The notes: a model not told the origin generated them from the letters alone. A stretch of 63,745 nt of DNA, filler included, from Octopus bimaculoides (GCF_001194135.2; 6 parts of 5 records of this genome joined end to end with filler, not necessarily neighbours in it), one strand, 5' to 3'. Positions 44,569 through 63,745 are shown, counted from the first letter of the whole stretch. Made by a program: numbers and translations.

Positions 44569-45905
44569 AATATACGTATGATACACACATACATAAGTAT
44601 ACACCCACATACATATACATACAGATATATATGCACATACAAATTTATGATTCAGTCTTGGGGATGGTACTAAATAATGTTATTATTCTGCATATTTGTA
44701 GGTTATAATTTGATTATTTAATTTTATTATTAAAGATGAGTTAGTCTATGCGTATTTGTTTAAGGTATATTAATAGATGAGTTACTAATGCCATTGCTTT
44801 AACCATGTTTGTGTGTATTTTATTATAATGATTATTATCATCAATATGAGCGTGGGAAAATATAGCATTTCTATAACATAATGGCGGGGTGATGGTTTTT
44901 ATATCTGTTCGTAGTCATGCTACAACCTTTTCAAATATAAGTAGAGAAATAATATATGCATAAATTAACCCTATAAACCTCTTGGACTATCTTATAAAAC
45001 TCTCTGACGATGCCCAGAGGCATACTCAAGTACCCTAATTTTATCTACAGATTTACAATATACTGAAAAGATGGAAATAACATATGGGGAACAGTGACCT
45101 CTTGGCTGAAACAGCTGTAAGAAACTGCTCTTCTTTCTCTATTCTAGAAATTACTTATACTTTACACATGTATTTATATATTATCTGAACTGTTTAAAAT
45201 AAATAAATAGATATGATATAATGTCTAACAGCTGGTAAATACTACCTCTGGATTCCCTCTATTTTCTTCTTGCTATATATATATCAACGGATAAGATATT
45301 AGAAGGGACTGGATAAGTCATTTTTCCAACTTGTTATTCATCGTTAAAATATGTTTATAGTATAATATATTTCATCAGACACAATACATTAAGTGCAAGG
45401 CGCTATGCAATAGTGTTTAGTTGTTCAATTAATCATTGAATCATTTATTGTTTTAGACCATCCATTTATTTAGTTATTTAATTTCAATTTTACTGTTTTA
45501 CTTGAGAGGGGGTACTAGCTAATAGTAGAATGTTCATATTTCACTATTTTAATTTTCATAATATTATTTTAATAGTCCAAGGGGGACAACTCTGTTTATT
45601 CATCTTTATAAATTGAAGAAGATACTAAAAAAACCATCAGATATTAAACTAATCAGCTAATTAGCTAATGAATGAATAAATAAATTAATTTAATTTAATA
45701 ATTAGTCAACTAATTGGTTGTGTAAATATGCNNNNNNNNNNNNNNNNNNNNNNNNNNNNNNNNNNNNNNNNNNNNNATATACAAATATACGTATGCATAC
45801 ACACATACATAAGTACACACACACATAGATAGAGATACAGATATATATGCACATATGATTCAGCCTTGGGGATAGTACAAAATAATGTTATTATTCTGCA
45901 TACTT
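44062..45905 (+). repeat. Pair of about 620-bp direct repeats (44062-44700 and 45285-45905) flanking a hammerhead-containing segment
   Basis: GGATAAG..CTTGTTATTCATCGTTAAAAT..CAGACACAATACATTAAGTGCAAGG..AAACTAATCAGCTAATTAGCTAATG occur in both; roughly 90% identity by eye. Confidence 0.85.
45001..45122 (+). ncRNA. Minimal type-I hammerhead ribozyme motif of Penelope-like terminal repeat, with 77-nt loop II
   Basis: Stem I TCT(45001-3)/AGA(45120-2); CTGACGA 45004-10; stem II GCCCAGAGG(45012-20)/CCTCTTGGC(45098-106), 8 of 9 pairs; GAAA 45108-11; palindromic stem III ACAGCTGT 45111-18; cleavage triplet GUA 45117-19. Confidence 0.7.
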
Positions 45906-46019
45906 GTAATGTCAATCTAATTGATGGTCTCCTTTTTCTCTTGTAGGTCAGAGGTGCTGAGGAACTCATCAGGTCTACGTGTTTCCACGTCTTCTAGTGT
46001 GTTTGTGTGTGTGTGGGGG

Positions 46020-46610
46020 GGGCACTTTAGTATTGTTTATTGAGTGCTTCACCTATCTTCTTGGGGTCTGCAGTTAGTGAGCCCTTTTCATCAAACAGTG
46101 GCCCTATCCTGTATCGCACAGAGGCAGACTCCTTTGCAAACTTGTAGAAGGCATTAGGGTTGCTTTTTATATTTTCCCCCGCTCTGGCTTCTCTGTTTAC
46201 CCTTTCTTTTTCATGGGAGAGTCTGATTTCATTCTCTGAGAATGCCATTTTGAGGAAGGGCGTTTTGCTGTCATTAGGTTCCTTATTTAAGCAATTCGAG
46301 AACTTTATCCTCCGTGTCATTAGGATTCGTCTATCTCGAGGAATAATGTTCTTGTGTGCGGTGGCTTTCTTCTCTGGGACAAACTTAATGCATATGGTTT
46401 GCATTATAGACATGAATTCATTGAATTTCATGTCACTGCTTTGCATGGACAGACTTTAAAGCCAGTTTTGCTGGAGTATCTCTTTTTTGATGGACTTCCA
46501 GTCAGACTTGTAGAAGTTCAAGTTCGCTAGCGTTTGGGATCCAGTAGTGTTGTATGATTCTTTACTTAGCTTTGGACCTTATATTTACAGTTCTATCATG
46601 TTATGGTCTG
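46020..46610 (-). mobile_element. CR1/L2-type LINE ORF2 fragment (linker between APE endonuclease and RT)
   Basis: LNFYKSDWKSIKKEI...NIKSNPNAFYKFAK...RIGPLFDEKGSLTADPKKIGEALNKQY, typical of the CR1-group inter-domain region. Confidence 0.75.
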
Positions 46611-46639
46611 AGTGGGTAGATGGTAATATGTTTATGTTG

Positions 46640-47495
46640 TGGATAAGTGCAGCTCCTCAACTCCTCTAACATGAAACCCATAACCTCGAGATATGTTGTT
46701 TACAAGAACTCGGCTTTGTCACACAACATGAAAATTAACATACTGATACAAGACTTAGTTAGGATAATGAAGAACATGTCTTCACTATGCAAACCCTACG
46801 TAACGAAGAAACATGTACAGAACTTCATGCACGGCATGCAGTTCTCTGGATATGATCAGAAAGATAGGGTTCGAGTATACAGGGGTGCTAGAAAGAAGTT
46901 GGATAACATTATATGTAATGAAACCCCAGATATAGAAGCAAAGACTGGAATAGAATACAAAGAGCTTGTGACAAAGCAAACAGGGTGAACACATGGTATA
47001 ACACTGACAAATATCAAGGAGTGATGTTTGTAGAGGCCACAGCCCATGGAGAACTAGTCCATAGATTTAGGAAAGCTCTGAAAGAGACTGAACTCAACAG
47101 TAAGATTGTTGAAAAGCCAGGGAACTCCATTAGATCACAACTATGTAGGACAATAATAACTACATGGTATGTAGGATTAGCCCTGGCATTAACTGTAGAA
47201 CTAGAGATGTAGTCTACAGCATAAGATGCATAGAAGGTGCTTGTAAAGATATGAACATGGAATACATAGGGGAGATATCTAGGAGGATAGTGGAAAGACT
47301 TTGAGACAATATGACGACACAAAACAGTCCTCCATACTCTACCAACATGCCAAAGACCAGCATGGAGGCAACCTGGGTCAACTTGACATCCGCATTTTAT
47401 CCAAGCACCCAAAGGACCCAACACTGAAACAAATACAGGAGTACGTCCTCATAAATGAAACTTCCCAAGTACTAAACAGGAAATATACGTAGTAG
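46640..47495 (+). mobile_element. Penelope-like retroelement 3' part (RT thumb, linker and GIY-YIG endonuclease), frameshifted
   Basis: MKPITSRYVVYKNSALSHNMKINILIQDLVRIMKN...MQFSGY; WYNTDKYQGVMFVEAT...KIVEKPGNSIRSQL; DVVYSIRC...EYIGEISRRIVERL; SILYQHAKDQH...LKQIQEYVLI..LNRK. Confidence 0.8.
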
Positions 47496-47718
47496 GTAAT
47501 CATACCTACATGCCCACAGTTTATATTTCTATACAGATAGAATAGTTAGTGGGATGTTATGTAGATGTATGTGTGTGTATATATGTATACGTATATGTAG
47601 CTAGGTAAATAGATATGAAAGTAAACAGATAGACATACAGACGGATAGGTACATTGGTAATATGAACAGACAAGCACACATACAAACATATACGCAAATG
47701 AAGACTAAAACACATGAC

Positions 47719-47759
<41 letters not shown>

Positions 47760-47900
47760 CACTTCACACAAGGACAATTCTTAACCATGCAGCTATGATA
47801 TAACAGTTTCCATCTACAAAATCCTCTCAAAAGTCTTTCGTCTGCCCAAAACTACAGTAGAAGACACTTGCCGAGGGTGCCATATCTACATATGTATATA

Positions 47901-48039
47901 TTAGGGTGACCTTTAGCAACAGGTAATTTTCTGAAAATTAAAATGTGGCTGCTCTGACCCCATAATCCTGTTCCAATCAATGAAAAGCTGGGGTGTGCAA
48001 AATTTCAGCTCAATCAAACAACTGCTAGGCGACCCTTAA
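47901..48039. mobile_element. Possible short MITE
   Basis: Imperfect TIRs TTAGGGTGACCT / AGGCGACCCTTAA around a GTGCAAAATTTCAGCTCAATC core. Confidence 0.3.
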
Positions 48040-49904
48040 ATGCCTTGAAGTCGGAACATACTATACGCAACAAATAATTCTGTTCAAAAGTGCTATATTG
48101 TTCCCTATCTTGACCATTTTGTGTTTTCTTAGAGAAATTTATGTGAACACATTGAGGCAACCCCAACAGATGTTTAAAAACATTCTGAATCAAATCTACC
48201 AATAGTTAATTTGAAAATTTCCTGAAATAACATGAAAATCTTAAGAAATTTTAGGTTTTCTTAAGAAAGCACACAACTTCTAAAAGAGAAATGCAAAGGA
48301 GTGTCTAAAGCTGGGAGTGTTTGACACCAGGTAAGTGAAAGCCAGAAAGGGGAGGAACAAGCAAGGGGTCTACCCTGGTGATCGGATATTTGTATATTTA
48401 ATTGCTAAATAGCAGCTACTACACCCTTTATGTTTATCTGTCCTTGTTTGTCCCCTCTTTGTAATGCCTTCATGGCAAATCGTTATGAAATAAAGTAGCT
48501 TGCTTACGAACCACATGGTTCCGGGTTCAGTCCCACTGCGTGACACATTGGGCAAGTGTCTTCTACCATAGCCTCTGGCTGACCAAAGCCTTGTGAGTAC
48601 ATTTGGTAGACAGAAAATAAAAGAAACCCGTCACACACATATATATATATATAGATATGCAGGGCAGGGAATCGTCAATTAGTAATAAAATTAATAATTA
48701 ACAATTTTGCCGGGTAGCTCAGTATGAAAAAACCTTTTCGGTAAAAAACATTTATAATCATAAATATATAGGGATTGACAGTAACCTGCTTCTCCAACAT
48801 ACTGAGAATTCAGAAATAGCAGTCAAAGAACTACTGATTTCAAAACTACAAATTATTACTCCAGATTGATAGCGATATTTTTGATACACACAGAACAAAA
48901 AACAGTAGAGAAGAGTTAAAAAACCACCTGCCTTTAGTTAATTTAGTACGATCGTTTCACAGTTAAGAGTANNNNNNNNNNNNNNNNNNNNNNNNNNNNN
49001 NNNNNNNNNNNNNNNNNNNNNNNNNNNNNNNNNNNNNNNNNNNNNNNNNNNNNNNNNNNNNNNNNNNNNNNNNNNNNNNNNNNNNNNNNNNNNNNNNNNN
49101 NNNNNNNNNNNNNNNNNNNNNNNNNNNNNNNNNNNNNNNNNNNNNNNNNNNNNNNNNNNNNNNNNNNNNNNNNNNNNNNNNNNNNNNNNNNNNNNNNNNN
49201 NNNNNNNNNNNNNNNNNNNNNNNNNNNNNNNNNNNNNNNNNNNNNNNNNNNNNNNNNNNNNNNNNNNNNNNNNNNNNNNNNNNNNNNNNNNNNNNNNNNN
49301 NNNNNNNNNNNNNNNNNNNNNNNNNNNNNNNNNNNNNNNNNNNNNNNNNNNNNNNNNNNNNNNNNNNNNNNNNNNNNNNNNNNNNNNNNNNNNNNNNNNN
49401 NNNNNNNNNNNNNNNNNNNNNNNNNNNNNNNNNNNNNNNNNNNNNNNNNNNNNNNNNNNNNNNNNNNNNNNNNNNNNNNNNNNNNNNNNNNNNNNNNNNN
49501 NNNNNNNNNNNNNNNNNNNNNNNNNNNNNNNNNNNNNNNNNNNNNNNNNNNNNNNNNNNNNNNNNNNNNNNNNNNNNNNNNNNNNNNNNNNNNNNNNNNN
49601 NNNNNNNNNNNNNNNNNNNNNNNNNNNNNNNNNNNNNNNNNNNNNNNNNNNNNNNNNNNNNNNNNNNNNNNNNTGTATGTATGTGTGTGTGTATATATTT
49701 ATGCGTCTGTGTTTGTCTCCCCAGCTTGACAACTGATGCTGGTGTGTTTACGTACCCATAACTTAGTGGTTCGGCAAAAGAGACCGAAAGAATAAGTACT
49801 AGGCTTACAAAGAATAAGTCCCGATGGCCACAGTCAAATGAATGAAACAAGTAAAAGAATATGATTTAGCTCCCAGATCTTTCCATCATGTCTGTCCTAA
49901 CCCT

Positions 49905-50535
49905 TTTGATAGCAACCTGCCCAAAACCTCCCTTGGTTCTGTGATACAAACTTCTTGATTTAAAGTGATCTAAATTAAAATCTTACATTAAAATTTCATG
50001 TTCATTTAGGTTCCAAATACCAGAATAATTAGTGACAAAGTTATTTTACTATATTTTTCAATATTTTCAAAATCACTTGAAACAAACTCGGAACATTTCA
50101 ACAGAAATATCCGTAACCTTATTCATACCAACCTACCCGAGACCACCTGTGGTTGTATGACACAAATTTCCCATTTTAAAATTATCTAAGTTTAAAATCT
50201 TCCATCAAAGTTTCATCTTCATTTATGTTCCAAGAACCTGATTAATTAATAATGACAAACTTATTTGTCAATATTCTATGATACAAACTTCCAAACACCA
50301 GCTTAATAATGACAAGGCTATTTTACTAAATTCTTCGTTATTTTTAAAATTAATTTAAACAAAAACAGCATATTTCAATAGAAATATCTTAGTCATATGT
50401 TTTGACTTCCAGACCTTTCAATCTAACCATTTTGATACCAACGTGTCAGAAACCACATCTACTTCTACAATACAAAGTTCCAAACATCAGTCTGATGATG
50501 ACAATGTTATTTTACTAAATTTTTCATTTTCAAAA
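49905..50535. repeat. Degenerate tandem copies of an AT-rich interspersed repeat
   Basis: GTTCCAAA(C/T)ACCAG..AATGACAA(A)GTTATTTTACTA recurs near 50010, 50225, 50290 and 50478. Confidence 0.6.
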
Positions 50536-50943
50536 TAAGAAAAAAGGATAAATAAAATAAAAGGCAGTTAATTACAAAAAAAAATTTGGTAAGAAAAGGG
50601 TCAACAATATAAATGTGTCTTTATTTCATAATTAAAAACATTATAATTGTTGTAAAATAGTCATCATCTCATTCTCATCCTCATTGCAATATCAGGGGGT
50701 GAGAGGAGGGGATGAGTCAATTACACTGATCCGTGTTCAACTGGTACTTATTTTAGCAATCCCAAAAGGAAGAGACGTAAAGCCAACCTTGATGGAATTT
50801 GAACTCAGAACATACTGACAGACAAAATGCCGTCAAGCATTTTGCCCCGAGCACCACCAGTTCTGGCAGCTTGCTGCCTTATAACCATTATTGATCTCGT
50901 TATCACAAATATAAACTACACTATCAAATCACTGTTGAAATTT

Positions 50944-52365
50944 TTATAGATTTTCAGCAAAAAATTCCCTGATCTTTAACCAGGACTTTTCTTGTGCTTC
51001 AGCATGTGGTCGAGGATAACCCCCAAATACAGTTGGACGGCCATACAAAGCAGTATAACAAGTGTGAAACAGAGGGGTATATGGGGGTTCCAAAAAGTGA
51101 CCCGCACCCTCATACATAATNNNNNNNNNNNNNNNNNNNNNNNNNNNNNNNNNNNNNNNNNNNNNNNNNNNNNNNNNNNNNNNNNNNNNNNNNNNNNNNN
51201 NNNNNNNNNNGGTTGGTGTTAACTTGTCAAACCAGAGGTAATAGTCACTTGTATAAACCACCTGGTCATCACCGCTAATAAGAAACAATACTTTGCTACG
51301 ACAAGTCTCATCGAAATAAAACAGTTTAGATTCATCTACTTTCCACAATGCCAATAAACTCCCATCATCTTTCACTTTAAAACTGCCATAGTCCAGAGAA
51401 GAGCTTGGAAGCTGTTTACCATTATGGCGGATGCTAAAAACAAAGAAGGCTGGCGAAGCGTTAATACTTATAACAGCGCTTACTTGTGGACACTGTTTCG
51501 CTATGTATAGAGCTATTATTCCTCCTAGAGATGTCCCTAAAACACCTATACCATTCTCACTGGAAACTTGCTCGTGGTTAATAAGCCACTCAATAGCCTC
51601 TTCGAAATATTCAAAATCAACGTCTGTGACGACTGAAGGTAAGTCTTTATAAGCAAAATAGGTCAAACTTAAAGTAATAAATCCATGGGACGCTAACAAA
51701 GCACCTCTGGATTCTATCAAAGAACCAGTGCTACCAAACAGATCTATCACAGCAGGATATCGTCGTTGTTGTCTGTTGGATGTTTCATCACTTGGTATGA
51801 ATAAACTACCCCGAAGTCTTCCGTGGTTAACTGTGATTTTACGGACACCAGATCTCATAAACGATCGTCGAACCAATTTGGTTGCTAATGGCTTTATATC
51901 AGAAGTAAACTCAGAATGCTGTGAGATATGACCAGGGTGGACCATCACAGTGCAATCCAAAGTTTTGGTGGCATCATGAGTCCTAATTCTACCATGTTTT
52001 CCAACTACTTGAGTCATACTCGAAAATAATCCCATGGGATCAATTCCAGTGTAAGTTCCCGCTAAACATGGATCAGTGACCAGATTAACACATTCGTCAA
52101 CTGAAGCATTGAAATCTCCGAAAGACCTGAAAACGGATTCTCTTTTCTTTGAGCTCTGTTCCATTGTGGCACTGACTGTGACATTTTCTTCAGGTTTCAA
52201 ACCAGAAACACTCACAGACAATTGCTCATCAACCAAACCATTTTCTGGATTCACTGTTACCGAAACTGGGCAGCGGGTTGAAACTAGCACTCTGGATAAG
52301 ACTGTTGGCTAGCTGGGTATGTGACGTAGAGCAGAGAGTAGTTGGTAGGATGGACGGAGGATCAT
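50944..52365 (-). pseudogene. ACOT: Second ACOT/BAAT-family copy with premature TAG at codon 19 (52311-52309); ORF open from GTG 52290 or ATG 52164 to TAA 50946-50944
   Basis: Reverse complement of the + copy with the same ATG context at 52365. AGC-TAG-CCA here versus AGC-TAC-CCA in the + copy. Triad motifs GTSLGG / ISGDDQ / GAGHFLEPPY are intact. The 90-N gap (51121-51210) corresponds to 21 bp in the other copy. Family call is strong; pseudogene status is uncertain. Confidence 0.65.
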
Positions 52366-52393
52366 CTTTCTCGGTCAGTGTATACTTGCAGGA

Positions 52394-52407
52394 CTGCAGA
52401 AAAAAAA
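52394..52407 (-). promoter_or_regulatory. 3' splice acceptor of the - strand ACOT copy
   Basis: TTTTTTTTCTGCAG| on the - strand, 28 nt upstream of ATG 52365. Confidence 0.6.
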
Positions 52408-55199
52408 TTAATAAATAAAATGGGTTGTTTTTAGATAAAAATTCAAGGTGAGACAAGCAGATTTTGTTAATAAAACAGTGACTTTAATTACCATAAGAAT
52501 TAATTAGATGTAGGCTTAGATGTAATGATTATATAAATAATAACACAGGTGAAGCTGTTTGGACCTGTCAAGCCAGGTGTAAACATAATCATAGCTGATG
52601 CTGGTGTCACGTAACTGGCACATGTGCCGGTGGCATGTAAAAAGCACCTTTTGAGCATTGGGCCTTCTGGAGGCAATGTGGCCGAAGCCAGTGGTATGTA
52701 AAAAAGCAGCTTTTGAGTATTGGGTGTCACACAGGCAATGGCAAATGAGTGAGACCTTTAGTTATATGCTGTGATTGAGAAGAAGACCCATCAAGCCAAG
52801 TGAAATCATAGCTGTAGCAGATACTGGTGTAATGCAACTGGCATTCGTACCAGTGGAACGTAAAAGCACCCGTTACACTCTTGGAGTGGTTGGCATCAGT
52901 AATGGCATCCAGCTGTAGAAACCATGCCAAATCAAACTAGAGTTTGGTGCAGCCCCTCAGCATCCCAGCTCTGGTCAAACCATCCAACCCACACCAGCAT
53001 GGACAACAGACGCTAAATGATGATGAAGTCTTGAGGTTCAGTCCCACTGCATGTGTCTTCTACTATAGCAGGGTTTCGCAATCATATTTTACCTATGGAT
53101 CCCTTTCATTTCTATTTTACTAGGGGCTGGAGATAGAGAGTATTTCTAGCTAATTAATTCCGTATTGGAATAGTACTCAGTTCAGGTCTAAGGAAAGAGG
53201 TACTGCCTAAATTTATCCTTTCTGAAATAACTCCACCTGAGAACGACTATATTCACCTATCCACATGTGGCTTATTCCTCTTCTTATACCCAAATAATTT
53301 TAATAAGTTGTGCTTCACTAACATCCTCATGTTTGNNNNNNNNNNCCTCTTCTTATACCCAAATAATTTTAATAAGTTGTGCTTCACTAACATCCTCATG
53401 TTTGCTCCGATTCTTTTTACTGCCCTTTCAAAAATACAAACACTCTGTACTTGTTGTTAACAGTTTCTTATATGTATTAACCCTCTCAACCACTTAGACT
53501 CTCTGAAGAAGCCTAGAGGCACATTCATCATCCAAACTTTATCTGCCCATNNNNNNNNNNNNNNNNNNNNNNNNNNNNNNNNNNNNNNNNNNNNNNNNNN
53601 NNNNNNNNNNNNNNNNNNNNNNNNNNNNNNNNNNNNNNNNNNNNNNNNNNTAGATGGATTGGTAGATAAATAGAAAGGAAGATAGATAATTAGTAGAAGT
53701 CGCAAAGTGACTTAAGTACTGAAAGTTTCACATGCATGTACTAATTTGCATACGAGCGCATGCGCACATGTATTCATCTGCATACGCGCACTCGCACACG
53801 CACTTGTTGTAGGATCGACTACTCACGACTAGCTAGCGTGGGTGCTCGTTGGGGACCACTCTGCTTTAGTAGTACCGGAGTAATATTTACTGTATTTTAT
53901 ACTTGGAGAAAAAAATATTTTTCCCAAATGTTCACTTCATTAGAAAAACTGTATCAGCTTTTGTAAATGCATTAAAAATACTATAACATAATCTGAACAT
54001 TATTTCAGAAATAAACTCCGTTCTCTTGCAGCATATAAAAGACAAATTTAGGTGAGGCGAAATGAGGTAAGTTTGTTGCTGCAGTTCTTCAGAATTACAT
54101 TTGAAATCAGATTCATACGCATCAATATCCATCCTTACACATTCGAATTATCAGAAATGTAAGAAGAATATAAAATATCTAGAGTAAATTGAAAAAGAAT
54201 ATGAAATTAACAGAATTTGACCAAATAAAAAAATCTCAGCATAAAGTTTTCTCTGTAGCTTTTTCACGATCTTCAGTCCCATTGCATGGCATCTTGGGCA
54301 AATGTCTTCAATCGTAACCTCAGGACAACCGAAGCCTTGTGAGCGGATTTGGTAGATGGAAACTGATAGAAGCCTGTCGTGTGTGTATTTGTACATATGT
54401 GTGTGTGTCATTGTGTCTGTGTTTGTCTCGCCCATCACCAACAAAGGGACTGATAGAATAAGTAGTAGGGTTTATAAAATGAAATAATTCCTCCAAAGCA
54501 ATGCTCCAGCATGTCTACAGTCAAATGACTAAAACAAGTAAAAGAAAGAATATAGGCAAAATGAAATACCTCGTTTCAGNNNNNNNNNNNNNNNNNNNNN
54601 NNNNNNNNNNNNNNNNNNNNNNNNNNNNNNNNNNNNNNNNNNNNNNNNNNNNNNNNNNNNNNNNNNNNNNNNNNNNNNNNNNNNNNNNNNNNNNNNNNNN
54701 NNNNNNNNNNNNNNNNNNNNNNNNNNNNNNNNNNNNNNNNNNNNNNNNNNNNNNNNNNNNNNNNNNNNNNNNNNNNNNNNNNNNNNNNNNNNNNNNNNNN
54801 NNNNNNNNNNNNNNNNNNNNNNNNNNNNNNNNNNNNNNNNNNNNNNNNNNNNNNNNNNNNNNNNNNNNNNNNNNNNNNNNNNNNNNNNNNNNNNNNNNNN
54901 NNNNNNNNNNNNNNNNNNNNNNNNNNNNNNNNNNNNNNNNNGACTAAAACAAGTAAAAGAAAGAATATAGGCAAAATGAAATACCTCGTTTCAGTCAGAC
55001 TGCGATCATGTTGGAGCACTCACTGCCTTGAAGAATTTTAGTCCAACGAAATCGATCCTAGTGCTTTAAGCTTGGTGCTTATTCTATAGGTTGCTTTTCC
55101 TGAACTGCCAAGTTTCAGGGACATAAACACCCCACCAAACACACACACATATTTATATATATTAAAAGTGTGGAAGGCCGATCCATGGGATAACCTTAG

Positions 55200-56019: not shown

Positions 56020-57740
56020 TTCTAGTAATCCAGTAGTACTCATAAAAAAGCTCCTTAATGTGTCATTCTACAAAACCTAGAATAAATAGTATGATACAAA
56101 AGAAAACCGTGTTTATATATATAGCCATTAAGAAAATGGAGAGGATACAAAAACGACATACATCAGCAAGTAGACATTCTAGTATGTCTCTTTATTCCAA
56201 AGTTATTAGAAGAATACATACACATGTAATAACAATTGTNNNNNNNNNNNNNNNNNNNNNNNNNNNNNNNNNNNNNNNNNNNNNNNNNNNNNNNNNNNNN
56301 NNNNNNNNNNNNNNNNNNNNNNNNNNNNNNNNNNNNNNNNNNNNNNNNNNNNNNNNNNNNNNNNNNNNNNNNNNNNNNNNNNNNNNNNNNNNNNNNNNNN
56401 NNNNNNNNNNNNNNNNNNNNNNNNNNNNNNNNNNNNNNNNNNNNNNNNNNNNNNNNNNNNNNNNNNNNNNNNNNNNNNNNNNNNNNNNNNNNNNNNNNNN
56501 NNNNNNNNNNNNNNNNNNNNNNNNNNNNNNNNNNNNNNNNNNNNNNNNNNNNNNNNNNNNNNNNNNNNNNNNNNNNNNNNNNNNNNNNNNNNNNNNNNNN
56601 NNNNNNNNNNNNNNNNNNNNNNNNNNNNNNNNNNNNNNNNNNNNNNNNNNNNNNNNNNNNNNNNNNNNNNNNNNNNNNNNNNNNNNNNNNNNNNNNNNNN
56701 NNNNNNNNNNNNNNNNNNNNNNNNNNNNNNNNNNNNNNNNNNNNNCATATAAGAAACTGTTAACAACAAGTACAAAGTGTTTGTATTTTTGAAAGGGCAG
56801 TAAAAAGAATCGGAGCAAACATGAGGATGTTAGTGAAGCACAACTTATTAAAATTATTTGGGTATAAGAAGAGGAATAAGCCACATGTGGATAGGTGAAT
56901 ATAGTCGTTCTCAGAAGGAGTTAGTTCAGGAAGGATGAATTTAGGCAGTACTTCTTTCCTTAGACCTGAAATGAGTACCATTCCAATGCGGAATTAATTA
57001 GCTAGAAATACTCTCTATCTCCAGCCCCTTGTAAAATAGAAATGAAAGGGATCCATAGGTAAAATATGATTGCGAAACCCTGCTATAGTAGAAGACACAT
57101 GCAGTGGGACTGAACCTCAAGACTTCATCATCATTTAGCGTCTGTTGTCCATGCTGGTGTGGGTTGGATGGTTTGACCAGAGCTGGGATGCTGAGGGGCT
57201 GCACCAAACTCTAGTTTGATTTGGCATGGTTTCTACAGCTGGATGCCCTCCATGATGCCAACCACTCCAAGAGTGTAACGGGTGCTTTTACGTTCCACTG
57301 GCACGAATGCCAGTTGCATTACACCAGTATCTGCTACAGCTATGATTTCACTTGGCTTGATGGGTCTTCTTCTCAATCACAGCATATAACTAAAGGTCTC
57401 ACTCATTTGCCATTGCCTGTGTGACACCCAATACTCAAAAGCTGCTTTTTTACATACCACTGGCTTCGGCCACATTGCCTCCAGAAGGCCCAATGCTCAA
57501 AAGGTGCTTTTTACATGCCACCGGCACATGTGCCAGTTACGTGACACCAGCATCAGCTATGACTATGTTTACACCTGGCTTGACAGGTCCAAACAGCTTC
57601 ACCTGTGTTATTATTTATATAATCATTACATCTGAGCCTACATCTAATTAATTCTTATGGTAGTTAAAGTCACTGTTTTATTAACAAAATCTGCTTGTCT
57701 CAACCTTGAGTTCTTATCTAAAACCCATTTTATTTATTAA

Positions 57741-57754
57741 TTTTTCTTCTGCAG
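57741..57754 (+). promoter_or_regulatory. 3' splice acceptor of a 5'-UTR intron, 28 nt upstream of the ACOT ATG
   Basis: TTTTTCTTCTGCAG| polypyrimidine tract plus CAG; conserved in the other copy. Confidence 0.65.
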
Positions 57755-57782
57755 TCCTCAAAGTATACACTGACCAAGAAAG

Positions 57783-59340
57783 ATGATCCTCCGTCCATCC
57801 TACCAACTACTCTCTGCTCTACGTCACATACCCAGCTACCCAACAGTCTTACCCAGAGTGCTAGTTTCAACCCGCTGCCCAGTTTCGGTAACAGTGAATC
57901 CAGAAAATGGTTTGGNNNNNNNNNNNNNNNNNNNNNNNNNNNNNNNNNNNNNNNNNNNNNNNNNNNNNNNNNNNNNNNNNNNNNNNNNNNNNNNNNNNNN
58001 NNNNNNNNNNNNNNNNNNNNNNNNNNNNNNNNNNNNNNNNNNNNNNNNNNNNNNNNNNNNNNNNNNNNNNNNNNNNNNNNNNNNNNNNNNNNNNNNNNNN
58101 NNNNNNNNNNNNNNNNNNNNNNNNNNNNNNNNNNNNNNNNNNNNNNNNNNNNNNNNNNNNNNNNNNNNNNNNNNNNNNNNNNNNNNNNNNNNNNNNNNNN
58201 NNNNNNNNNNNNNNNNNNNNNNNNNNNNNNNNNNNNNNNNNNNNNNNNNNNNNNNNNNNNNNNNNNNNNNNNNNNNNNNNNNNNNNNNNNNNNNNNNNNN
58301 NNNNNNNNNNNNNNNNNNNNNNNNNNNNNNNNNNNNNNNNNNNNNNNNNNNNNNNNNNNNNNNNNNNNNNNNNNNNNNNNNNNNNNNNNNNNNNNNNNNN
58401 NNNNNNNNNNNNNNNNNNNNNNNNNNNNNNNNNNNNNNNNNNNNNNNNNNNNNNNNNNNNNNNNNNNNNNNNNNNNNNNNNNNNNNNNNNNNNNNNNNNN
58501 NNNNNNNNNNNNNNNNNNNNNNNNNNNNNNNNNNNNNNNNNNNNNNNNNNNNNNNNNNNNNNNNNNNNNNNNNNNNNCAGACAACGACGACGATATCCTG
58601 CTGTGATAGATCTGTTTGGTAGCACTGGTTCTTTGATAGAATCCAGAGGTGCTTTGTTAGCATCCCATGGATTTATTACTTTAAGTTTGGCTTATTTTGG
58701 TTATAAAGACTTACCTTCAGTCATCACCGAGGTTGATTTTGAATATTTCGAAGAGGCTATTGAGTGGTTTATTAACCACGAGCAAGTTTCCAGTGAGAAT
58801 GGTATAGGTGTTTTAGGAACATCTCTAGGAGGAATAATAGCTCTATACATAGTGAAACAGTGTCCACAAGTAAGCGCTGTTATAAGTATTAACGCTTCGC
58901 CAGCCTTCTTTGTTTTTAGCATCCGCCATAATGGTAAACAGCTTCCAAGCTCTTCTCTGGACTATGGCAGTTTTAAAGTGAAAGATGATGGGAGTTTATT
59001 GGCATTGTGGAAAGTAGATGAATCTAAACTGTTTTATTTCGATGAGACTTGTCGTAGCAAAGTATTGTTTCTTATTAGCGGTGATGACCAGGTGGTTTAT
59101 ACAAGTGACTATTACCTCTGGTTTGACAAGTTAACACCAACCAAGAGAAAAGATGTTGAATTTATTATGTATGAGGGTGCAGGTCACCTTTTGGAACCCC
59201 CATACACCCCTCTGTTTCACACTTGTTATACTGCTTTGTATGGCCGTCCAACGGTATTTGGGGGTTATCCTCGACCACATGCTGAAGCACAAGAAAAGTC
59301 CTGGTTAAAGATAAGGGAATTTTTTGCTGAAAATCTATAA
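57783..59340 (+). CDS. ACOT: Type-I acyl-CoA thioesterase / BAAT-family enzyme, single coding exon, about 450 aa after correcting the 662-N gap (457 bp in the other copy), with predicted mitochondrial presequence
   Basis: ATG at 57783 follows an in-frame TGA. N-terminus MILRPSYQLLSALRHIPSYPTVLPRVLVSTRC is R/S/L-rich with no acidic residues. Family motifs YPAVIDLFGSTGSLIESRGALLASHGF, nucleophile elbow GTSLGG (Ser codon 58822-58824), LFLISGDDQ (Asp) and YEGAGHLLEPPY (His). TAA ends at 59340; C-terminus FFAENL has no PTS1. 57916-58577 is N, so that part is unverified and no specific paralog is assignable. Confidence 0.9.
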
Positions 59341-59699
59341 AAATTTCAACAGTGATTTGATAGTGTAGTTTATATTTGTGATAACGAGATCAATAATGGT
59401 TATAAGGCAGCAAGCTGTCAGAACTGGTAGTGCTCGAGGCAAAATGCTTGACGGCATTTTGTCTGTCAGTATGTTCTGAGTTCAAATTCCATCAAGGTTG
59501 GCTTTACGTCTCTTCCTTTTGGTATTGCTAAAATAAGTACCAGTTGAAACACGGATCAGTGTAATTGACTCATCCCCTCCTCTCATCGTCTGATATTGCT
59601 GGCCTTGTACCAAAGATTGAAATCGATATTAATGATTGCAATGAGGATGAGAATCAGATGATGACTATTTTACAACAATTATAATGTTTTTAATTATGA

Positions 59700-59705
59700 A
59701 ATAAA
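59700..59705 (+). terminator. Candidate polyadenylation signal for the + ACOT copy
   Basis: AATAAA about 360 nt after the stop, followed by T-rich sequence; mirrored at 50620-50625 on the - strand. Confidence 0.4.
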
Positions 59706-59928
59706 GACACATTTATATTGTTGACTCTTTTCTTACCAAATTTATTTTTGTAATTAACTGCCTTTTATTTTATTTCTCTTCTTTTTTATTTTGAAAATGA
59801 AGAATTTAGTAAAATAACATTGTCATCANNNNNNNNNNNNNNNNNNNNNNNNNNNNNNNNNNNNNNNNNNNNTTAATTAATTAANNNNNNNNNNNNNNNN
59901 NNNNNNNNNNNNNNNNNNNNNNNNNNNN

Positions 59929-59971
<43 letters not shown>

Positions 59972-61538
59972 CTTTTACTAGTTTCAGTCGTTTGACTTGA
60001 CTGCGGCCATGCTGGGGTACCGCCGTGAAGAATTTTTCGTCGTATGAATCAACCCGTGTACTGTTTTTGTCGAGCCTAGTATTTATTCTAACCGTCTCTC
60101 TTGCCGAACTGCCAAGTTATGGGGACGTAAACACACCAACACTTGTAGTCAAGCAGTATTGGTGGTGGGGTGGGGGGACAAACACAAAGGCAGGTACACA
60201 CACATACACAACGGGCTTCTTTCAATTCCCGTCTACCACATCCACTCACAAGTGTTTGATCGGTCCGGTGCTATAGTAGAAGACAGTTGTGCAAGGTGCC
60301 ATATAGCAGGACTGAACCTAAATGTCCGACAAAACATTTTGCTGTATTCTTCTTTGTTTCGGTTTGGTTCTGTGTTCAAATCCCGTACAGGCTAGCTACA
60401 GCTTTCATTATTTCGAAGATAGAAGTCGGTGAAATGGCAGAATCGTTAGCACGTCGACCAAAATGCATTTCGTCAGTTTTTCTTTTTTTCATGTTTTGAG
60501 TTCAAATTTCGCCCAGCTCGATTTTGCCTTTCATCCATTTGGAATCGTTCAATCAAGTACCAGTCAAGTGCTGGTTTCGATGTGATTGACTGTCTCCATC
60601 CCCACAAATTCCAGGCCTTGTACCTAAAGTAGAAAAGATTATTTCGAGGACGAAATATAACACCAGTTCTATCAAGTTTTAACGTTCATCGTATTAATTT
60701 AAATCCACACCTTACAAGCGCTGGCCTTGTGCTACTACGCTAAGTTTTTCCACGAACCTTCTCTTTCAGAAAAGCCTTTGAATGGGCGGAAGTGTGTATG
60801 AATGCATGTATATGTATGTTTGTGCGTATATGTGTGTATATGTATGTATGTGTGTTTGTGTGCGCGCGCGTTTGTATGAGAGTAAAATTAGTTAACGGTA
60901 GATAGTGAAAGTAGGAGAGACAGGCAAAATTGAGAGGATAGAAAGACAGGTGAATGGATCAAAATGGAAGAAATTATGGAGAAGGCGAACTGGAAGCGTG
61001 GAATAAAATGAAAGAAGAGAGAGAGAGAGAGGGAGAGAGAGAGAGAGGGAGAGAGAGGGAGAGGGAGAGAGAGAGAGAGAAGATGAATAATGAACTAATA
61101 AAATGCAGAACGATATATATATACATATACATACATATATATATNNNNNNNNNNNNNNNNNNNNNNNNNNNNNNNNNNNNNNNNNNNNNNNNNNNNNNNN
61201 NNNNNNNNNNNNNNNNNNNNNNNNNNNNNNNNNNNNNNNNNNNNNNNNNNNNNNNNNNNNNNNNNNNNNNNNNNNNNNNNNNNNNNNNNNNNNNNNNNNN
61301 NNNNNNNNNNNNNNNNNNNNNNNNNNNNNNNNNNNNNNNNNNNNNNNNNNNNNNNNNNNNNNNNNNNNNNNNNNNNNNNNNNNNNNNNNNNNNNNNNNNN
61401 NNNNNNNNNNNNNNNNNNNNNNNNNNNNNNNNNNNNNNNNNNNNNNNNNNNNNNNNNNNNNNNNNNNNNNNNNNNNNNNNNNNNNNNNNNNNNNNNNNNN
61501 NNNNNNNNNNNNNNNNNNNNNNNNNNNNNNNNNNNNNN

Positions 61539-61583
<45 letters not shown>

Positions 61584-63745
61584 TAGGCGTGGCTGTGTGG
61601 TAAGGGGCCGGCTTCCCAACTGTATGGTTCCGGGTACGACCGACTGCGTGGCGTCTTGGGCAAATATCTCCTACCATAGCCTCGGGCTGACCAAAACCTT
61701 GTAAGTGGATTTGGTAGACGGAAACTGGAAGAAGCTCGTCGTATATATATATGTACATATTTGTGTGTATGTGACTGTGTTTGTCCCCTCGCAATCGCTT
61801 GACAACGGATGCTGGTGTGTTTATGTAGGCATAATCTAGTGGTTCAGCAAAAAACACCGATAGAATAAGTTCTAGACTTACAAAGAATAAGTCCGAAGGT
61901 CGATTTCTTCGACTAGCATTCTTTAAGGCGGTTAAAGCATGGCTGCAATCAACTCACTAAAACAAGTAAAAGAATATATATGTGTGTGTGTATGCGTGTG
62001 AATGTTTAGACACACACACACACACACACACACATGTACTCCCTACTCTTTTACTCTTTTAGTTGTTTCAATCATTATTTGACTGTGGCCATGCTAGAAC
62101 ACCGCCTTTTAGTCGAGCAAATCGACCCCAGGACTTATCTTTGTAATCCTAGTACTTATTCTATCGGTCTCTTTTCGACGAACTGCTAAGTTACGGGGAC
62201 GTAAATGTATTTATATGTATGCATGTATACATGTATATATATCCAAAGTGAAGTAGTGAGAAACAGATAGAACGAACAGAAGAATGGAAGCATGTTTAAA
62301 TGCATGCCTGTGCGCGCGCGCATGTGTGTGGTTGAGGGAAAGAAGGAAGCAAATGCAGTGTGGTTGAAGTAGGAAGTCAGAAAGACGACAGTGAGTGAGA
62401 GAGAGAGAGAAAAGAGAAAAGAGAAAAGAGAAGGAGAGAGATTGAAAGAAGGGGAGGAGGAAGAAAAGTACATCCAATGAAAAGAAGGAAAAAAAAACTA
62501 CAACCTGACCCATCCCTACTCCACCTCCACCTCCGCCTCCGCCTCCGCCTCCTCTCCTCCTTTCGCTCCTGCTCTTGCTCCTCCTCCTCCTCTCCTATTT
62601 CTTTCTCCTCACTCTCCTCCCCCAATTAACCTGTTCGCTGAGGAGTTTTCTATAACGCATCATTCAACTGTATTAAAACTGGGATCTCAGCTGGTGATTG
62701 TTGTACAGTGTGGGTGACGGTGGTGGTGGTTGTGGTGGTGGTGGTGGTGGAGGTTGGAGAGAAGAGAGGGAGGGGGCGATGGCGGTGGTGGCGGTGATGG
62801 CGGTGGNNNNNNNNNNNNNNNNNNNNNNNNNNNNNNNNNNNNNNNNNNNNNNNNNNNNNNNNNNNNNNNNNNNNNNNNNNNNNNNNNNNNNNNNNNNNNN
62901 NNNNNNNNNNNNNNNNNCCGCCTCCGCCTCCGCCTCCTCTCCTCCTTTCGCTCCTGCTCTTGCTCCTCCTCCTCCTCTCCTATTTCTTTCTCCTCACTCT
63001 CCTCCCCCAATTAACCTGTTCGCTGAGGAGTTTTCTATAACGCATCATTCAACTGTATTAAAACTGGGATCTCAGCTGGTGATTGTTGTACAGTGTGGGT
63101 GACGGTGGTGGTGGTTGTGGTGGTGGTGGTGGTGGAGGTTGGAGAGAAGAGAGGGAGGGGGCGATGGCGGTGGTGGCGGTGATGGCGGTGGTGGGTTGTG
63201 TTGCGATTGTGATGATGGTGATGATTGTGATGATGGCGTCAATAAGAACTGAAGGCGGAGTTGCTTACAGAACAGCCAAGCAACCATCATCAATACCACC
63301 ACCACCATCATCATCATCATGGTCTTTCATTATAATCAGCATTTTAACTAATATCGTTACTATCATCCCTGTCATCATTATCATCACCATCATCAGCGTC
63401 TTCGTAATCATCATCGTCACCATCATCATCGTCATCATCACCATCATAGTCGTCATCGTCATCATCAACATCATCATCATCATCATCGTCGTCGTCGTCG
63501 TCATTGTCACCGGCAGCGGCGCCAAGAGCATCGTTGGCTTTAATAAGCATCATCAGCATTAACACTGAATTACTACCACTACCACCGACTGCCTCCCTCC
63601 CTCGCCGCCATCAATACCACCACCTCCTACCACCACCACCACCACCCACCACCACCACCACCTTATCATTTATCGATGGTCGTCAACGTTGTTTTGTCCT
63701 TGTTCGTTGACGTCGTTCGTTATCAACGACAATCACCACCACTGC

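What the first reader, a model, noticed from the sequence alone, without database searches (positions are those of the whole stretch)
52309..52311. Amber stop in the mitochondrial presequence of one copy: pseudogene, retargeted enzyme or ADAR-rescued codon
The - copy has TAG where the + copy has TAC (codon 19), while its catalytic triad and downstream frame are intact. There are three possible outcomes. (1) Pseudogene. (2) Re-initiation at GTG 52290, giving a presequence-less, possibly cytosolic enzyme, an ACOT1/ACOT2-like split; the next ATG (52164) would remove the first 67 residues. (3) A-to-I editing of UAG to UIG (Trp). UAG is the preferred ADAR triplet and coleoid cephalopods recode extensively, so editing could act as an on/off switch for the mitochondrial form. 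Option 3 is speculation.
Basis: partly seen in the sequence, partly recalled or inferred. Interest (0 to 1): 0.7.

Follow-up and report, generated by a model that had tools for sequence, protein, structure and literature searches.

The report
Stop codon in duplicated octopus thioesterase
One of two nearly identical, back-to-back copies of an octopus acyl-CoA thioesterase gene carries a real, recently acquired stop codon at position 19, and it is most likely an ordinary young pseudogene, not an RNA-editing switch.

Summary
TAG sits at 52311..52309 (- strand) as codon 19 of an ORF starting at ATG 52365. The + copy and five other octopus copies have TAC, so the stop is a derived C>G change.

The piece is Octopus bimaculoides chromosome CM046630.1. 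The two genes are arms of a head-to-head inverted duplication, 97.6% identical. O. vulgaris has only one copy within 10 kb either side. They encode BAAT/ACOT-type acyl-CoA thioesterases with a conserved, arginine-rich, acid-free N-terminal extension.

The most likely reading is a nascent unprocessed pseudogene or null allele. The copy is apparently redundant. Its private changes run 7 nonsynonymous to 3 synonymous (omega about 0.7) and include G91E and W115S at deeply conserved residues. One nonsense hit is expected at this divergence.

Re-initiation looks poor. No AUG lies before codon 68, three out-of-frame AUGs intervene, and Met68 is not conserved.

ADAR rescue cannot be tested here, and its prior is low. 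Only 2 of 133 TAG codons are edited in the published O. bimaculoides neural editome. The site lies in a 7-bp hairpin only, and the ancestral codon was TAC, not TGG.

N gaps hide a third of the + copy and 7 codons of the - copy. Interest is low.

The parts
52309..52311 (-). TAG, codon 19 of the - copy (A-). It is a derived C>G change from TAC.
   Evidence: TAC in A+, O. bimaculoides C, O. vulgaris A, O. sinensis A, O. sinensis C and a partial O. sinensis copy
50944..52365 (-). A- coding region, a single exon. It encodes a BAAT/ACOT-type thioesterase, is interrupted by TAG at codon 19, and contains a 90-N gap.
52267..52365 (-). N-terminal extension (codons 1-33) ahead of the conserved fold. It has 4 Arg, no Asp/Glu, and an amphipathic segment RPSYQLLSALR. 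Putative mitochondrial presequence.
52394..52410 (-). Polypyrimidine tract plus CAG splice acceptor about 30 nt upstream of the ATG. It is conserved in all copies and species and implies an upstream non-coding 5' exon.
51121..51210 (.). Assembly gap inside the A- CDS (90 N; the + copy has 21 nt here).
52288..52290 (-). In-frame GTG, codon 26.
52162..52164 (-). First in-frame ATG after the stop (codon 68). It is the start used by the GenBank models P0005 and P0015, and is ATC in O. vulgaris and O. sinensis.
52062..52184 (-). Out-of-frame 40-codon ORF from ATG 52184 (A at -3). It overlaps ATG 52164. Further out-of-frame ATGs lie at 52241 and 52229.
52282..52314 (-). Local hairpin. The 7-bp stem AGCUAGC (52314-52308) pairs with GCUAGUU (52288-52282), and the A of UAG pairs with U. 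This is the only predicted helix containing the site.
52093..52095 (-). GAA, Glu91, where Gly is invariant in 13 homologues and in human ACOT2 and ACOT4.
52021..52023 (-). TCG, Ser115, where Trp is found in 12 of 13 homologues and in human ACOT2 and ACOT4.
51529..51531 (-). Ser279, the nucleophile in GTSLGG.
51265..51267 (-). Asp367 of the triad (SGDDQ).
51097..51099 (-). His400 of the triad (GAGHF).
57783..59340 (+). A+ coding region. TAC is at 57837-57839, and a 662-N gap at 57916-58577 hides roughly codons 45-197.
50496..53474 (.). Left arm of the head-to-head inverted duplication.
56746..59828 (.). Right arm of the inverted duplication. It continues beyond the piece.
53879..53989 (+). Spacer block homologous, in the A+ orientation, to sequence about 1.1 kb upstream of the O. 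vulgaris orthologue. It suggests that A+ keeps the ancestral upstream context.

Best explanation
The - copy (A-) is the extra member of a young inverted (head-to-head) duplication of a BAAT/ACOT-type acyl-CoA thioesterase gene, seen only in O. bimaculoides among the octopus loci examined. It has acquired a genuine TAC>TAG nonsense substitution at codon 19, inside the N-terminal targeting-like extension. With no usable downstream AUG, the full-length enzyme is no longer made. The copy is therefore a nascent unprocessed pseudogene, or a null allele still segregating. The rest of its reading frame looks intact because the lesion is recent. Shown here: the stop, its derived state, the duplication, and the family assignment. 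Inferred: loss of function and the absence of any rescue.
For: 1. TAG is present at codon 19, and TAC is found in all six other copies and species.
2. The piece is O. bimaculoides CM046630.1. The two genes are arms of an inverted duplication with 2301 of 2358 aligned bases identical. O. vulgaris has a single A copy within 10 kb either side. dS between the copies is 0.041, against 0.21-0.26 to the O. vulgaris orthologue. So the duplicate is recent and apparently redundant, and paralogues B and C lie 60-85 kb away.
3. The arms differ by 2.4%, against a reported genome heterozygosity of 0.08% (PMC7656900). Their inverted orientation also argues against collapsed alleles.
4. A- private changes run 7 nonsynonymous plus the stop against 3 synonymous, giving omega about 0.7. 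Orthologue pairs give 0.13-0.25, and P = 0.058 under omega 0.2. These changes include G91E at a Gly invariant in 13 homologues and in human ACOT2 and ACOT4, and W115S.
5. 4.4% of random substitutions in this CDS create a stop. With 8-16 private substitutions, the chance of at least one nonsense is 0.3-0.5.
6. No AUG lies between codon 19 and codon 68. Three out-of-frame AUGs intervene. Met68 is not conserved and lies inside PF04775, which spans residues 46-180.
7. No dsRNA is predicted around the site. The fold z-score is 0.22, the only helix is a 7-bp hairpin, and no cis inverted repeat covers the site.
Against: 1. There is no frameshift or second stop in the sequenced parts of the ORF, and the catalytic triad is intact.
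2. There are no indels in 875 nt of shared CDS, against 5 in about 1547 nt of duplicated flanks (Poisson P = 0.059). dN/dS between the copies is 0.33. Either constraint acted until recently, or the arms exchange sequence by gene conversion.
3. G91E and W115S lie under the N gap of the + copy, so both copies may share them.
4. The + copy cannot be shown to be intact, so redundancy rests partly on paralogues B and C.
5. Neither the base call nor transcription could be checked.
Confidence: 0.68

Rival explanations
1. The TAG is not a fixed feature of the gene. It would be a heterozygous SNP of the sequenced animal, or a consensus or assembly error in a gap-ridden 98%-identical repeat, and the locus normally encodes Tyr19.
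For: The region comes from a short-read assembly with nine N gaps in 16.7 kb, and contig ends overlap at one gap. Copies 98% identical are prone to chimeric contigs. Nonsense alleles tend to be young and polymorphic.
Against: The G lies 13 nt and 63 nt from other A- specific variants on one uninterrupted 2.1-kb contig, so it is in phase with the A- haplotype. Genome heterozygosity is only 0.08%.
Confidence: 0.1
2. A- still makes a protein without the presequence, by one of three routes. These are non-AUG initiation at GTG 52290, re-initiation at AUG 52164 after the 18-codon uORF-like remnant, or splicing of an upstream exon into a cryptic acceptor (CCAGAG| at about 52291) just past the stop. 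The product would be a cytosolic enzyme, as in the mammalian ACOT1/ACOT2 pair.
For: The CDS is a single exon behind a 5'-UTR intron. No exon junction follows the stop, so classical NMD need not remove the mRNA. This last point rests on general knowledge. GTG 52290 has A at -3. GenBank models start at Met68. The O. sinensis RefSeq model P0016 splices into the equivalent cryptic acceptor after codon ~26.
Against: GUG starts are inefficient in eukaryotes. AUGs at 52241, 52229 and 52184 are out of frame, and the ORF from 52184 overlaps AUG 52164. Met68 is ATC in O. vulgaris and O. sinensis, and starting there cuts into PF04775. The P0016 model is a computational chimera that runs through a partial gene copy. 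G91E and W115S suggest the mature domain is itself decaying.
Confidence: 0.08
3. ADAR edits UAG to UIG (Trp) in some tissues or conditions. This restores a full-length presequence-bearing enzyme and makes A- a conditionally expressed mitochondrial isoform.
For: UAG is the favoured ADAR triplet (general knowledge). Coleoids edit massively, and stop-loss UAG>UGG events are explicitly handled and tabulated for O. bimaculoides (PMC8382921). The A of the codon pairs with U in a small hairpin that the TAC>TAG change itself strengthens. Premature-stop-correcting editing is established in fungi (PMC10776026).
Against: The base rate is low: 2 of 133 TAG codons are edited in the O. bimaculoides neural editome, and editing incidence is about half as high in non-neural genes. 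The local fold is no more stable than shuffles (z 0.22), and the stem is only 7 bp. No cis partner lies within the A- arm. The only long complement is the other arm 5.5 kb away, on a divergently transcribed gene. The ancestral codon is TAC, not TGG, so this is not the harm-permitting G>A route seen in fungi. The TAG is not conserved in any other copy or species.
Confidence: 0.04
4. Translational readthrough of UAG-C yields low amounts of full-length protein.
For: The base after the stop is C (UAG CCA). From general knowledge, this is among the leakier contexts.
Against: There is no match to known readthrough-promoting motifs such as CAR-YYA, and no downstream structure. Basal readthrough is typically well below 1% (general knowledge).
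Confidence: 0.02

Closest known systems
Unprocessed (duplicated) pseudogenes arising by a nonsense mutation in a young tandem or inverted duplicate
   Same: The lineage-specific duplicate carries flanking non-coding DNA and the intron acceptor. It has a single derived disabling substitution and elevated dN/dS on its own branch, and intact paralogues lie nearby.
   Different: There is only one lesion. The frame and catalytic residues are still intact. Neither expression nor fixation is known.
Human ACOT2 (mitochondrial) / ACOT1 (cytosolic) pair of type-I acyl-CoA thioesterases (PDB 3HLK, 3K2I)
   Same: Same two-domain fold family (PF04775 + PF08840) with a Ser-His-Asp triad. These are near-identical neighbouring duplicates, with an N-terminal extension ahead of the fold in the mitochondrial form.
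   Different: From general knowledge, ACOT1 has its own AUG at the start of the mature domain. A- has no AUG between the stop and codon 68, so the presequence is disabled rather than cleanly removed.
Premature-stop-correcting (PSC) A-to-I editing in Fusarium and Neurospora, and stop-loss UAG>UGG sites in coleoid editomes
   Same: An in-frame UAG in an otherwise intact ORF, in an organism with heavy A-to-I mRNA editing.
   Different: Fungal PSC sites mostly derive from TGG, are conserved, and are edited at a median of 79%. Here the ancestor is TAC, the TAG is private to one copy, no dsRNA is predicted, and no RNA data were available.

Membership tests
BAAT/ACOT type-I acyl-CoA thioesterase family | N-terminal Bile_Hydr_Trans domain (PF04775) | tested here: met
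   residues 46-180, E 1e-24
BAAT/ACOT type-I acyl-CoA thioesterase family | C-terminal BAAT_C alpha/beta-hydrolase domain (PF08840) | tested here: met
   residues 249-450, E 8e-42. Best solved homologues are human ACOT2 (E 1e-56) and ACOT4.
BAAT/ACOT type-I acyl-CoA thioesterase family | Ser-His-Asp catalytic triad (Ser nucleophile, as in thioesterases, rather than the Cys of BAAT) | tested here: met
   S279 in GTSLGG, D367 and H400 align with the ACOT2 motifs GISKGG, GQDDH and GHYIEPPY
BAAT/ACOT type-I acyl-CoA thioesterase family | Uninterrupted ORF from an AUG through both domains (functional member) | tested here: not met
   TAG at codon 19, and the next in-frame AUG is codon 68, inside PF04775
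Unprocessed pseudogene | Origin by genomic duplication that includes non-coding flanks and intron sequence | tested here: met
   the arms include 1.1 kb upstream, with the conserved acceptor, and more than 450 nt downstream
Unprocessed pseudogene | Disabling mutation that is derived relative to functional relatives | tested here: met
Unprocessed pseudogene | Relaxed selection (omega near 1) on its branch | tested here: inconclusive
   7 nonsynonymous to 3 synonymous, omega about 0.7, P = 0.058 against omega 0.2. Five of the seven changes lie under the gap of the other copy.
Unprocessed pseudogene | No functional protein product | not testable with these tools
   No reads, RNA-seq or proteomics were reachable. 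The protein clusters contain only genome-derived models.
ADAR stop-loss / premature-stop-correcting editing site | A-to-G mismatch between RNA and DNA at the UAG | not testable with these tools
   No per-site editome is held.
ADAR stop-loss / premature-stop-correcting editing site | Extended double-stranded RNA containing the site | tested here: not met
   z 0.22, a 7-bp stem only, and no cis inverted repeat over 52300-52320
ADAR stop-loss / premature-stop-correcting editing site | Ancestral codon TGG and/or conservation of the editable TAG in relatives | tested here: not met
   the ancestral codon is TAC, and TAG is found only in this copy
ACOT1/ACOT2-type cytosolic/mitochondrial paralogue pair | Near-identical neighbouring duplicates | tested here: met
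ACOT1/ACOT2-type cytosolic/mitochondrial paralogue pair | The presequence-less copy has its own AUG at the start of the mature domain | tested here: not met
ACOT1/ACOT2-type cytosolic/mitochondrial paralogue pair | The N-terminal extension is a working mitochondrial targeting signal | not testable with these tools
   The composition fits (4 Arg, 0 acidic, muH 0.57), but no predictor or experiment was available.

The most novel reading that the evidence does not exclude
The TAC>TAG change created an ADAR-editable amber codon whose A sits in a hairpin strengthened by the mutation itself. Tissue-specific UAG>UIG editing would then turn the mitochondrial isoform of this duplicate on and off. That would be an animal counterpart of fungal premature-stop-correcting editing, arising de novo from a non-TGG codon.
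Probability: 0.03. Interest if true: 0.65.

Novelty: new member of a known kind. Interest (0 to 1): 0.15.

Why it matters
The main consequence is for annotation. The GenBank models for this locus start at Met68 or bridge N gaps with artificial introns, and they probably describe a disabled duplicate. The locus also shows recent inverted duplication, and apparently concerted evolution, inside an octopus BAAT/ACOT gene cluster. It would matter more only if copy-specific RNA-seq showed editing at the amber codon. In that case it would be a clean, datable example of a newly born stop-loss editing site in an animal.

Tried and rejected
1. Allelic haplotypes mis-scaffolded as a duplication: rejected. 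The arms differ by 2.4% against a reported heterozygosity of 0.08%, and they are inverted.
2. Transcript-derived proteins in the large protein collection: none found. The clusters holding the two copies contain only genome-derived models.
Albertin 2015 and Liscovitch-Brauer 2017 are not held. The Shoshan 2021 supplements give only codon-class totals.
4. Long-range RNA partners for the site within the A- unit: none found.
5. Locating the 5' non-coding exon by conservation with O. vulgaris: only a ~110-nt upstream block aligned, and homology ends before the candidate donor ATGAG|gtaagt at 54062. It remains open whether A- has its own promoter.
6. Pfam scan of five other ORFs in the piece: no hits.
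7. Pyrrolysine-type decoding of UAG: dismissed on general knowledge, since it is known only in some archaea and bacteria and this is an animal nuclear gene.

Full report
**Observation**

Read on the - strand, the sequence from 52365 is ATG ATC CTC CGT ... CCC AGC TAG CCA. This gives MILRPSYQLLSALRHIPS followed by a stop at 52311..52309, codon 19. The + copy starts at 57783 and reads TAC (Tyr) at 57837..57839. GTG 52290 is codon 26 and ATG 52164 is codon 68.

Two qualifications apply.
- The - copy's frame is 'intact' only across a 90-N gap (51121-51210), where the + copy has 21 nt.
- The + copy has a 662-N gap (57916-58577) covering about 457 nt, roughly codons 45-197. About a third of the supposedly intact reference copy is therefore unseen.

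**What the locus is**

The gene models encoded by the window lie on Octopus bimaculoides GCA_001194135.2, chromosome record CM046630.1 (10.08 Mb), at about 1.21-1.23 Mb. Both copies encode two-domain BAAT/ACOT proteins:
- PF04775 spans residues 46-180 and PF08840 spans residues 249-450.
- The best solved homologues are human mitochondrial ACOT2 (3HLK, E 1e-56) and ACOT4 (3K2I).
- The nucleophile Ser279 (GTSLGG), Asp367 and His400 align with the ACOT2 and ACOT4 catalytic motifs.

The coding sequence is a single exon. A polypyrimidine tract plus CAG acceptor about 30 nt upstream of the ATG is conserved in every copy and species examined. This implies a non-coding 5' exon further upstream.

Octopus species carry three orthologue groups:
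- Group A: O. vulgaris P0001, O. sinensis P0016, and both window copies.
- Group B: P0003, P0017 and O. bimaculoides P0008.
- Group C: P0004, P0018 and O. bimaculoides P0002.

In O. bimaculoides, C and B form a second head-to-head pair 60-85 kb away.

**The duplication**

The two A genes are arms of an inverted, divergently oriented duplication. The arms are 50496-53474 and 56746-59828, with 2301 of 2358 aligned bases identical and about 3.3 kb between them. Weaker inverted matches (92-95%) continue outward to 44660 and 62164. O. vulgaris has only one A copy within 10 kb either side.

dS between the arms is 0.041. Between O. bimaculoides A and O. vulgaris A it is 0.21-0.26. The duplication, or the last homogenisation of the arms, is therefore much younger than the species split.

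The 2.4% arm divergence is about 30 times the reported heterozygosity of O. bimaculoides (0.08%, PMC7656900). Allelic contigs would not be expected to scaffold in inverted orientation. The two sequences are thus paralogues rather than alleles.

A ~110-nt block in the spacer (53879-53989) is homologous, in the + orientation, to sequence about 1.1 kb upstream of the O. vulgaris gene. This weakly suggests that the + copy keeps the ancestral upstream context and the - copy is the derived insertion. The location of the 5' exon, and whether the - copy has one, could not be established.

**Polarity and context of the stop**

All six comparison sequences have TAC at codon 19: O. bimaculoides A+ and C, O. 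vulgaris A, O. sinensis A and C, and a partial O. sinensis copy. TAG is therefore a derived C>G transversion private to the - copy.

The N-terminal ~33 residues are conserved across paralogues and species. They contain four Arg, no acidic residues, and an amphipathic stretch (muH 0.57). They also lie ahead of the first residues that align with the ACOT2 crystal construct. A mitochondrial presequence is a reasonable reading, but it is untested.

**Constraint or decay**

Between the two copies dN/dS is 0.33. I then counted changes private to the - copy, meaning sites where all other sequences agree. There are 7 nonsynonymous changes plus the stop, against 3 synonymous, giving omega about 0.7. 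Orthologue pairs give 0.13-0.25. P = 0.058 under omega 0.2, and the counts fit omega 1.

Two of these changes are radical and hit deeply conserved residues:
- G91E, where Gly is invariant in 13 homologues from octopods to sea stars and in human ACOT2 and ACOT4.
- W115S, where Trp is found in 12 of 13 homologues and in the human enzymes.

Both lie under the N gap of the + copy, so the two copies may share them. The + copy has 3 nonsynonymous and 3 synonymous private changes in the part that can be compared.

On the other side, the 875 nt of CDS present in both copies has no indel, while about 1547 nt of duplicated flanks has five (P = 0.059). Either constraint acted until recently, or the arms exchange sequence by gene conversion.

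In this CDS 4.4% of random substitutions create a stop. With 8-16 private substitutions, the chance of at least one nonsense is 0.3-0.5. One stop and nothing else is what a recently released duplicate should look like.

**Option 2: restart or retargeting**

No AUG lies between the stop and codon 68. Out-of-frame AUGs sit at 52241 (A at -3, G at +4), 52229 and 52184 (A at -3). The ORF from 52184 runs to 52062 and overlaps AUG 52164. Met68 is ATC in O. vulgaris and O. sinensis, and starting there removes the first ~22 residues of PF04775.

GUG initiation is possible but inefficient in eukaryotes (general knowledge).

The stop is followed by no exon junction, so the mRNA need not be removed by junction-dependent NMD. 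This is an inference from the gene structure.

One extra route was noticed. The O. sinensis RefSeq model P0016 splices from a partial gene copy into a cryptic acceptor (CCAGAG|) just after codon ~26. The same sequence exists in the - copy at about 52291. That model looks like a computational chimera.

The GenBank models of the - copy (P0005, P0015) simply start at Met68.

**Option 3: editing**

UAG>UGG stop-loss editing is recognised in coleoid editomes (PMC8382921 methods), but it is rare.
- In that paper's tables, 2 TAG codons are edited in O. bimaculoides out of 133 TAG codons in the aligned set. By comparison, about 4.5% of TAC and TAT codons are edited.
- Editing incidence is about half as high in non-neural genes.

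Around the site, the mRNA folds no better than shuffled sequence: z = 0.22 for both the 301-nt and the 121-nt window. The only helix containing the site is a 7-bp stem, AGCUAGC with GCUAGUU, which the TAC>TAG change lengthens by one pair. No inverted repeat within the - copy's arm covers the site. The only long complement is the other arm 5.5 kb away, which belongs to a divergently transcribed gene.

In the fungal precedent (PMC10776026), editable premature stops mostly derive from TGG and are edited at a median of 79%. Here the ancestor is TAC and the TAG is confined to one copy. I put the probability of functionally relevant editing at a few percent. It cannot be excluded without RNA data.

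**Comparison with known systems and verdict**

The protein belongs to the BAAT/ACOT type-I thioesterase family by domains and triad, but it fails the requirement of an uninterrupted ORF. It resembles the ACOT1/ACOT2 pair in being near-identical duplicates, but it lacks the defining second start codon. It meets the structural criteria of an unprocessed pseudogene: a genomic duplicate with flanks and a derived disabling change. The relaxed-selection test is suggestive but inconclusive, and expression is unknown.

The finding is real but ordinary. It is a young, probably non-functional duplicate in a draft-quality, gap-rich region.

**Limits**

No reads, RNA-seq, proteomics or targeting predictor were available, and the key papers with per-site editing tables were not held.

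Noticed in passing
window 44660-48587 vs L001 1-1313 (window-equivalent 60852-62164): The inverted duplication extends well beyond the arms that hold the genes. Identity falls from 99% next to the spacer, to 97-98% over the genes, to 92-95% distally. This fits arm-to-arm gene conversion near the centre of a palindrome, or an older duplication than the genic dS suggests.
   Followed up: partly
L002 10001-11356 and L003 9932-10849 (CM046630.1 1,289,290-1,309,364): A second head-to-head pair of family members (C on the - strand, B on the + strand, starts about 18 kb apart) lies 60-85 kb from the window pair. The B gene's first ~140 codons are missing behind a 100-N gap.
   Followed up: partly
window 52267-52284 / 57864-57881; P0007 residues ~20-95: An 18-nt segment (AGTTTCAACCCGCTGCCC, encoding STRCPV) at the junction of the extension and the mature domain is present in O. 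bimaculoides A and C and in O. vulgaris C. It is absent in O. vulgaris A and in O. sinensis A and C, a pattern that cuts across orthology. The Argonauta hians homologue has three tandem copies of a similar segment. The junction appears prone to slippage or conversion.
   Followed up: no
codons 1-200 vs 201-450 of O. bimaculoides A and C: The N-terminal halves of paralogues A and C within O. bimaculoides are far more alike than their C-terminal halves. The upstream intron sequence is also conserved among paralogues. This suggests concerted evolution of the 5' half.
   Followed up: no
L005 10001-60897 (O. sinensis VCDQ01005828.1): RefSeq model XP_036356228.1 (P0016, 499 aa) for the O. sinensis orthologue is a chimera. 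It uses two small upstream exons, then a partial gene copy at ~13.9 kb read in another frame, then a splice into a cryptic acceptor inside the presequence region of the real gene at 59.6 kb. The canonical MILRPSY ORF of that gene is intact.
   Followed up: partly
window 54062-54072 and 58578: The GenBank model of the + copy (P0006, 254 aa) takes its Met from ATGAG|gtaagt in the spacer and joins it across 4.5 kb, including the 662-N gap, to a pseudo-acceptor inside the CDS. This is an annotation artefact of the gap. A TATA-like CATATAAAAG lies about 25 nt upstream of that ATG.
   Followed up: partly
window 53336-53345: At this 10-N gap the flanking contig ends both match the same 59 nt of the other arm (56816-56874). 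The contig ends therefore overlap, and the gap is probably spurious.
   Followed up: no
window 52162-52164: The in-frame ATG at codon 68 is found in O. bimaculoides A- and C. O. vulgaris and O. sinensis have ATC, so it is not a conserved alternative start.
   Followed up: yes
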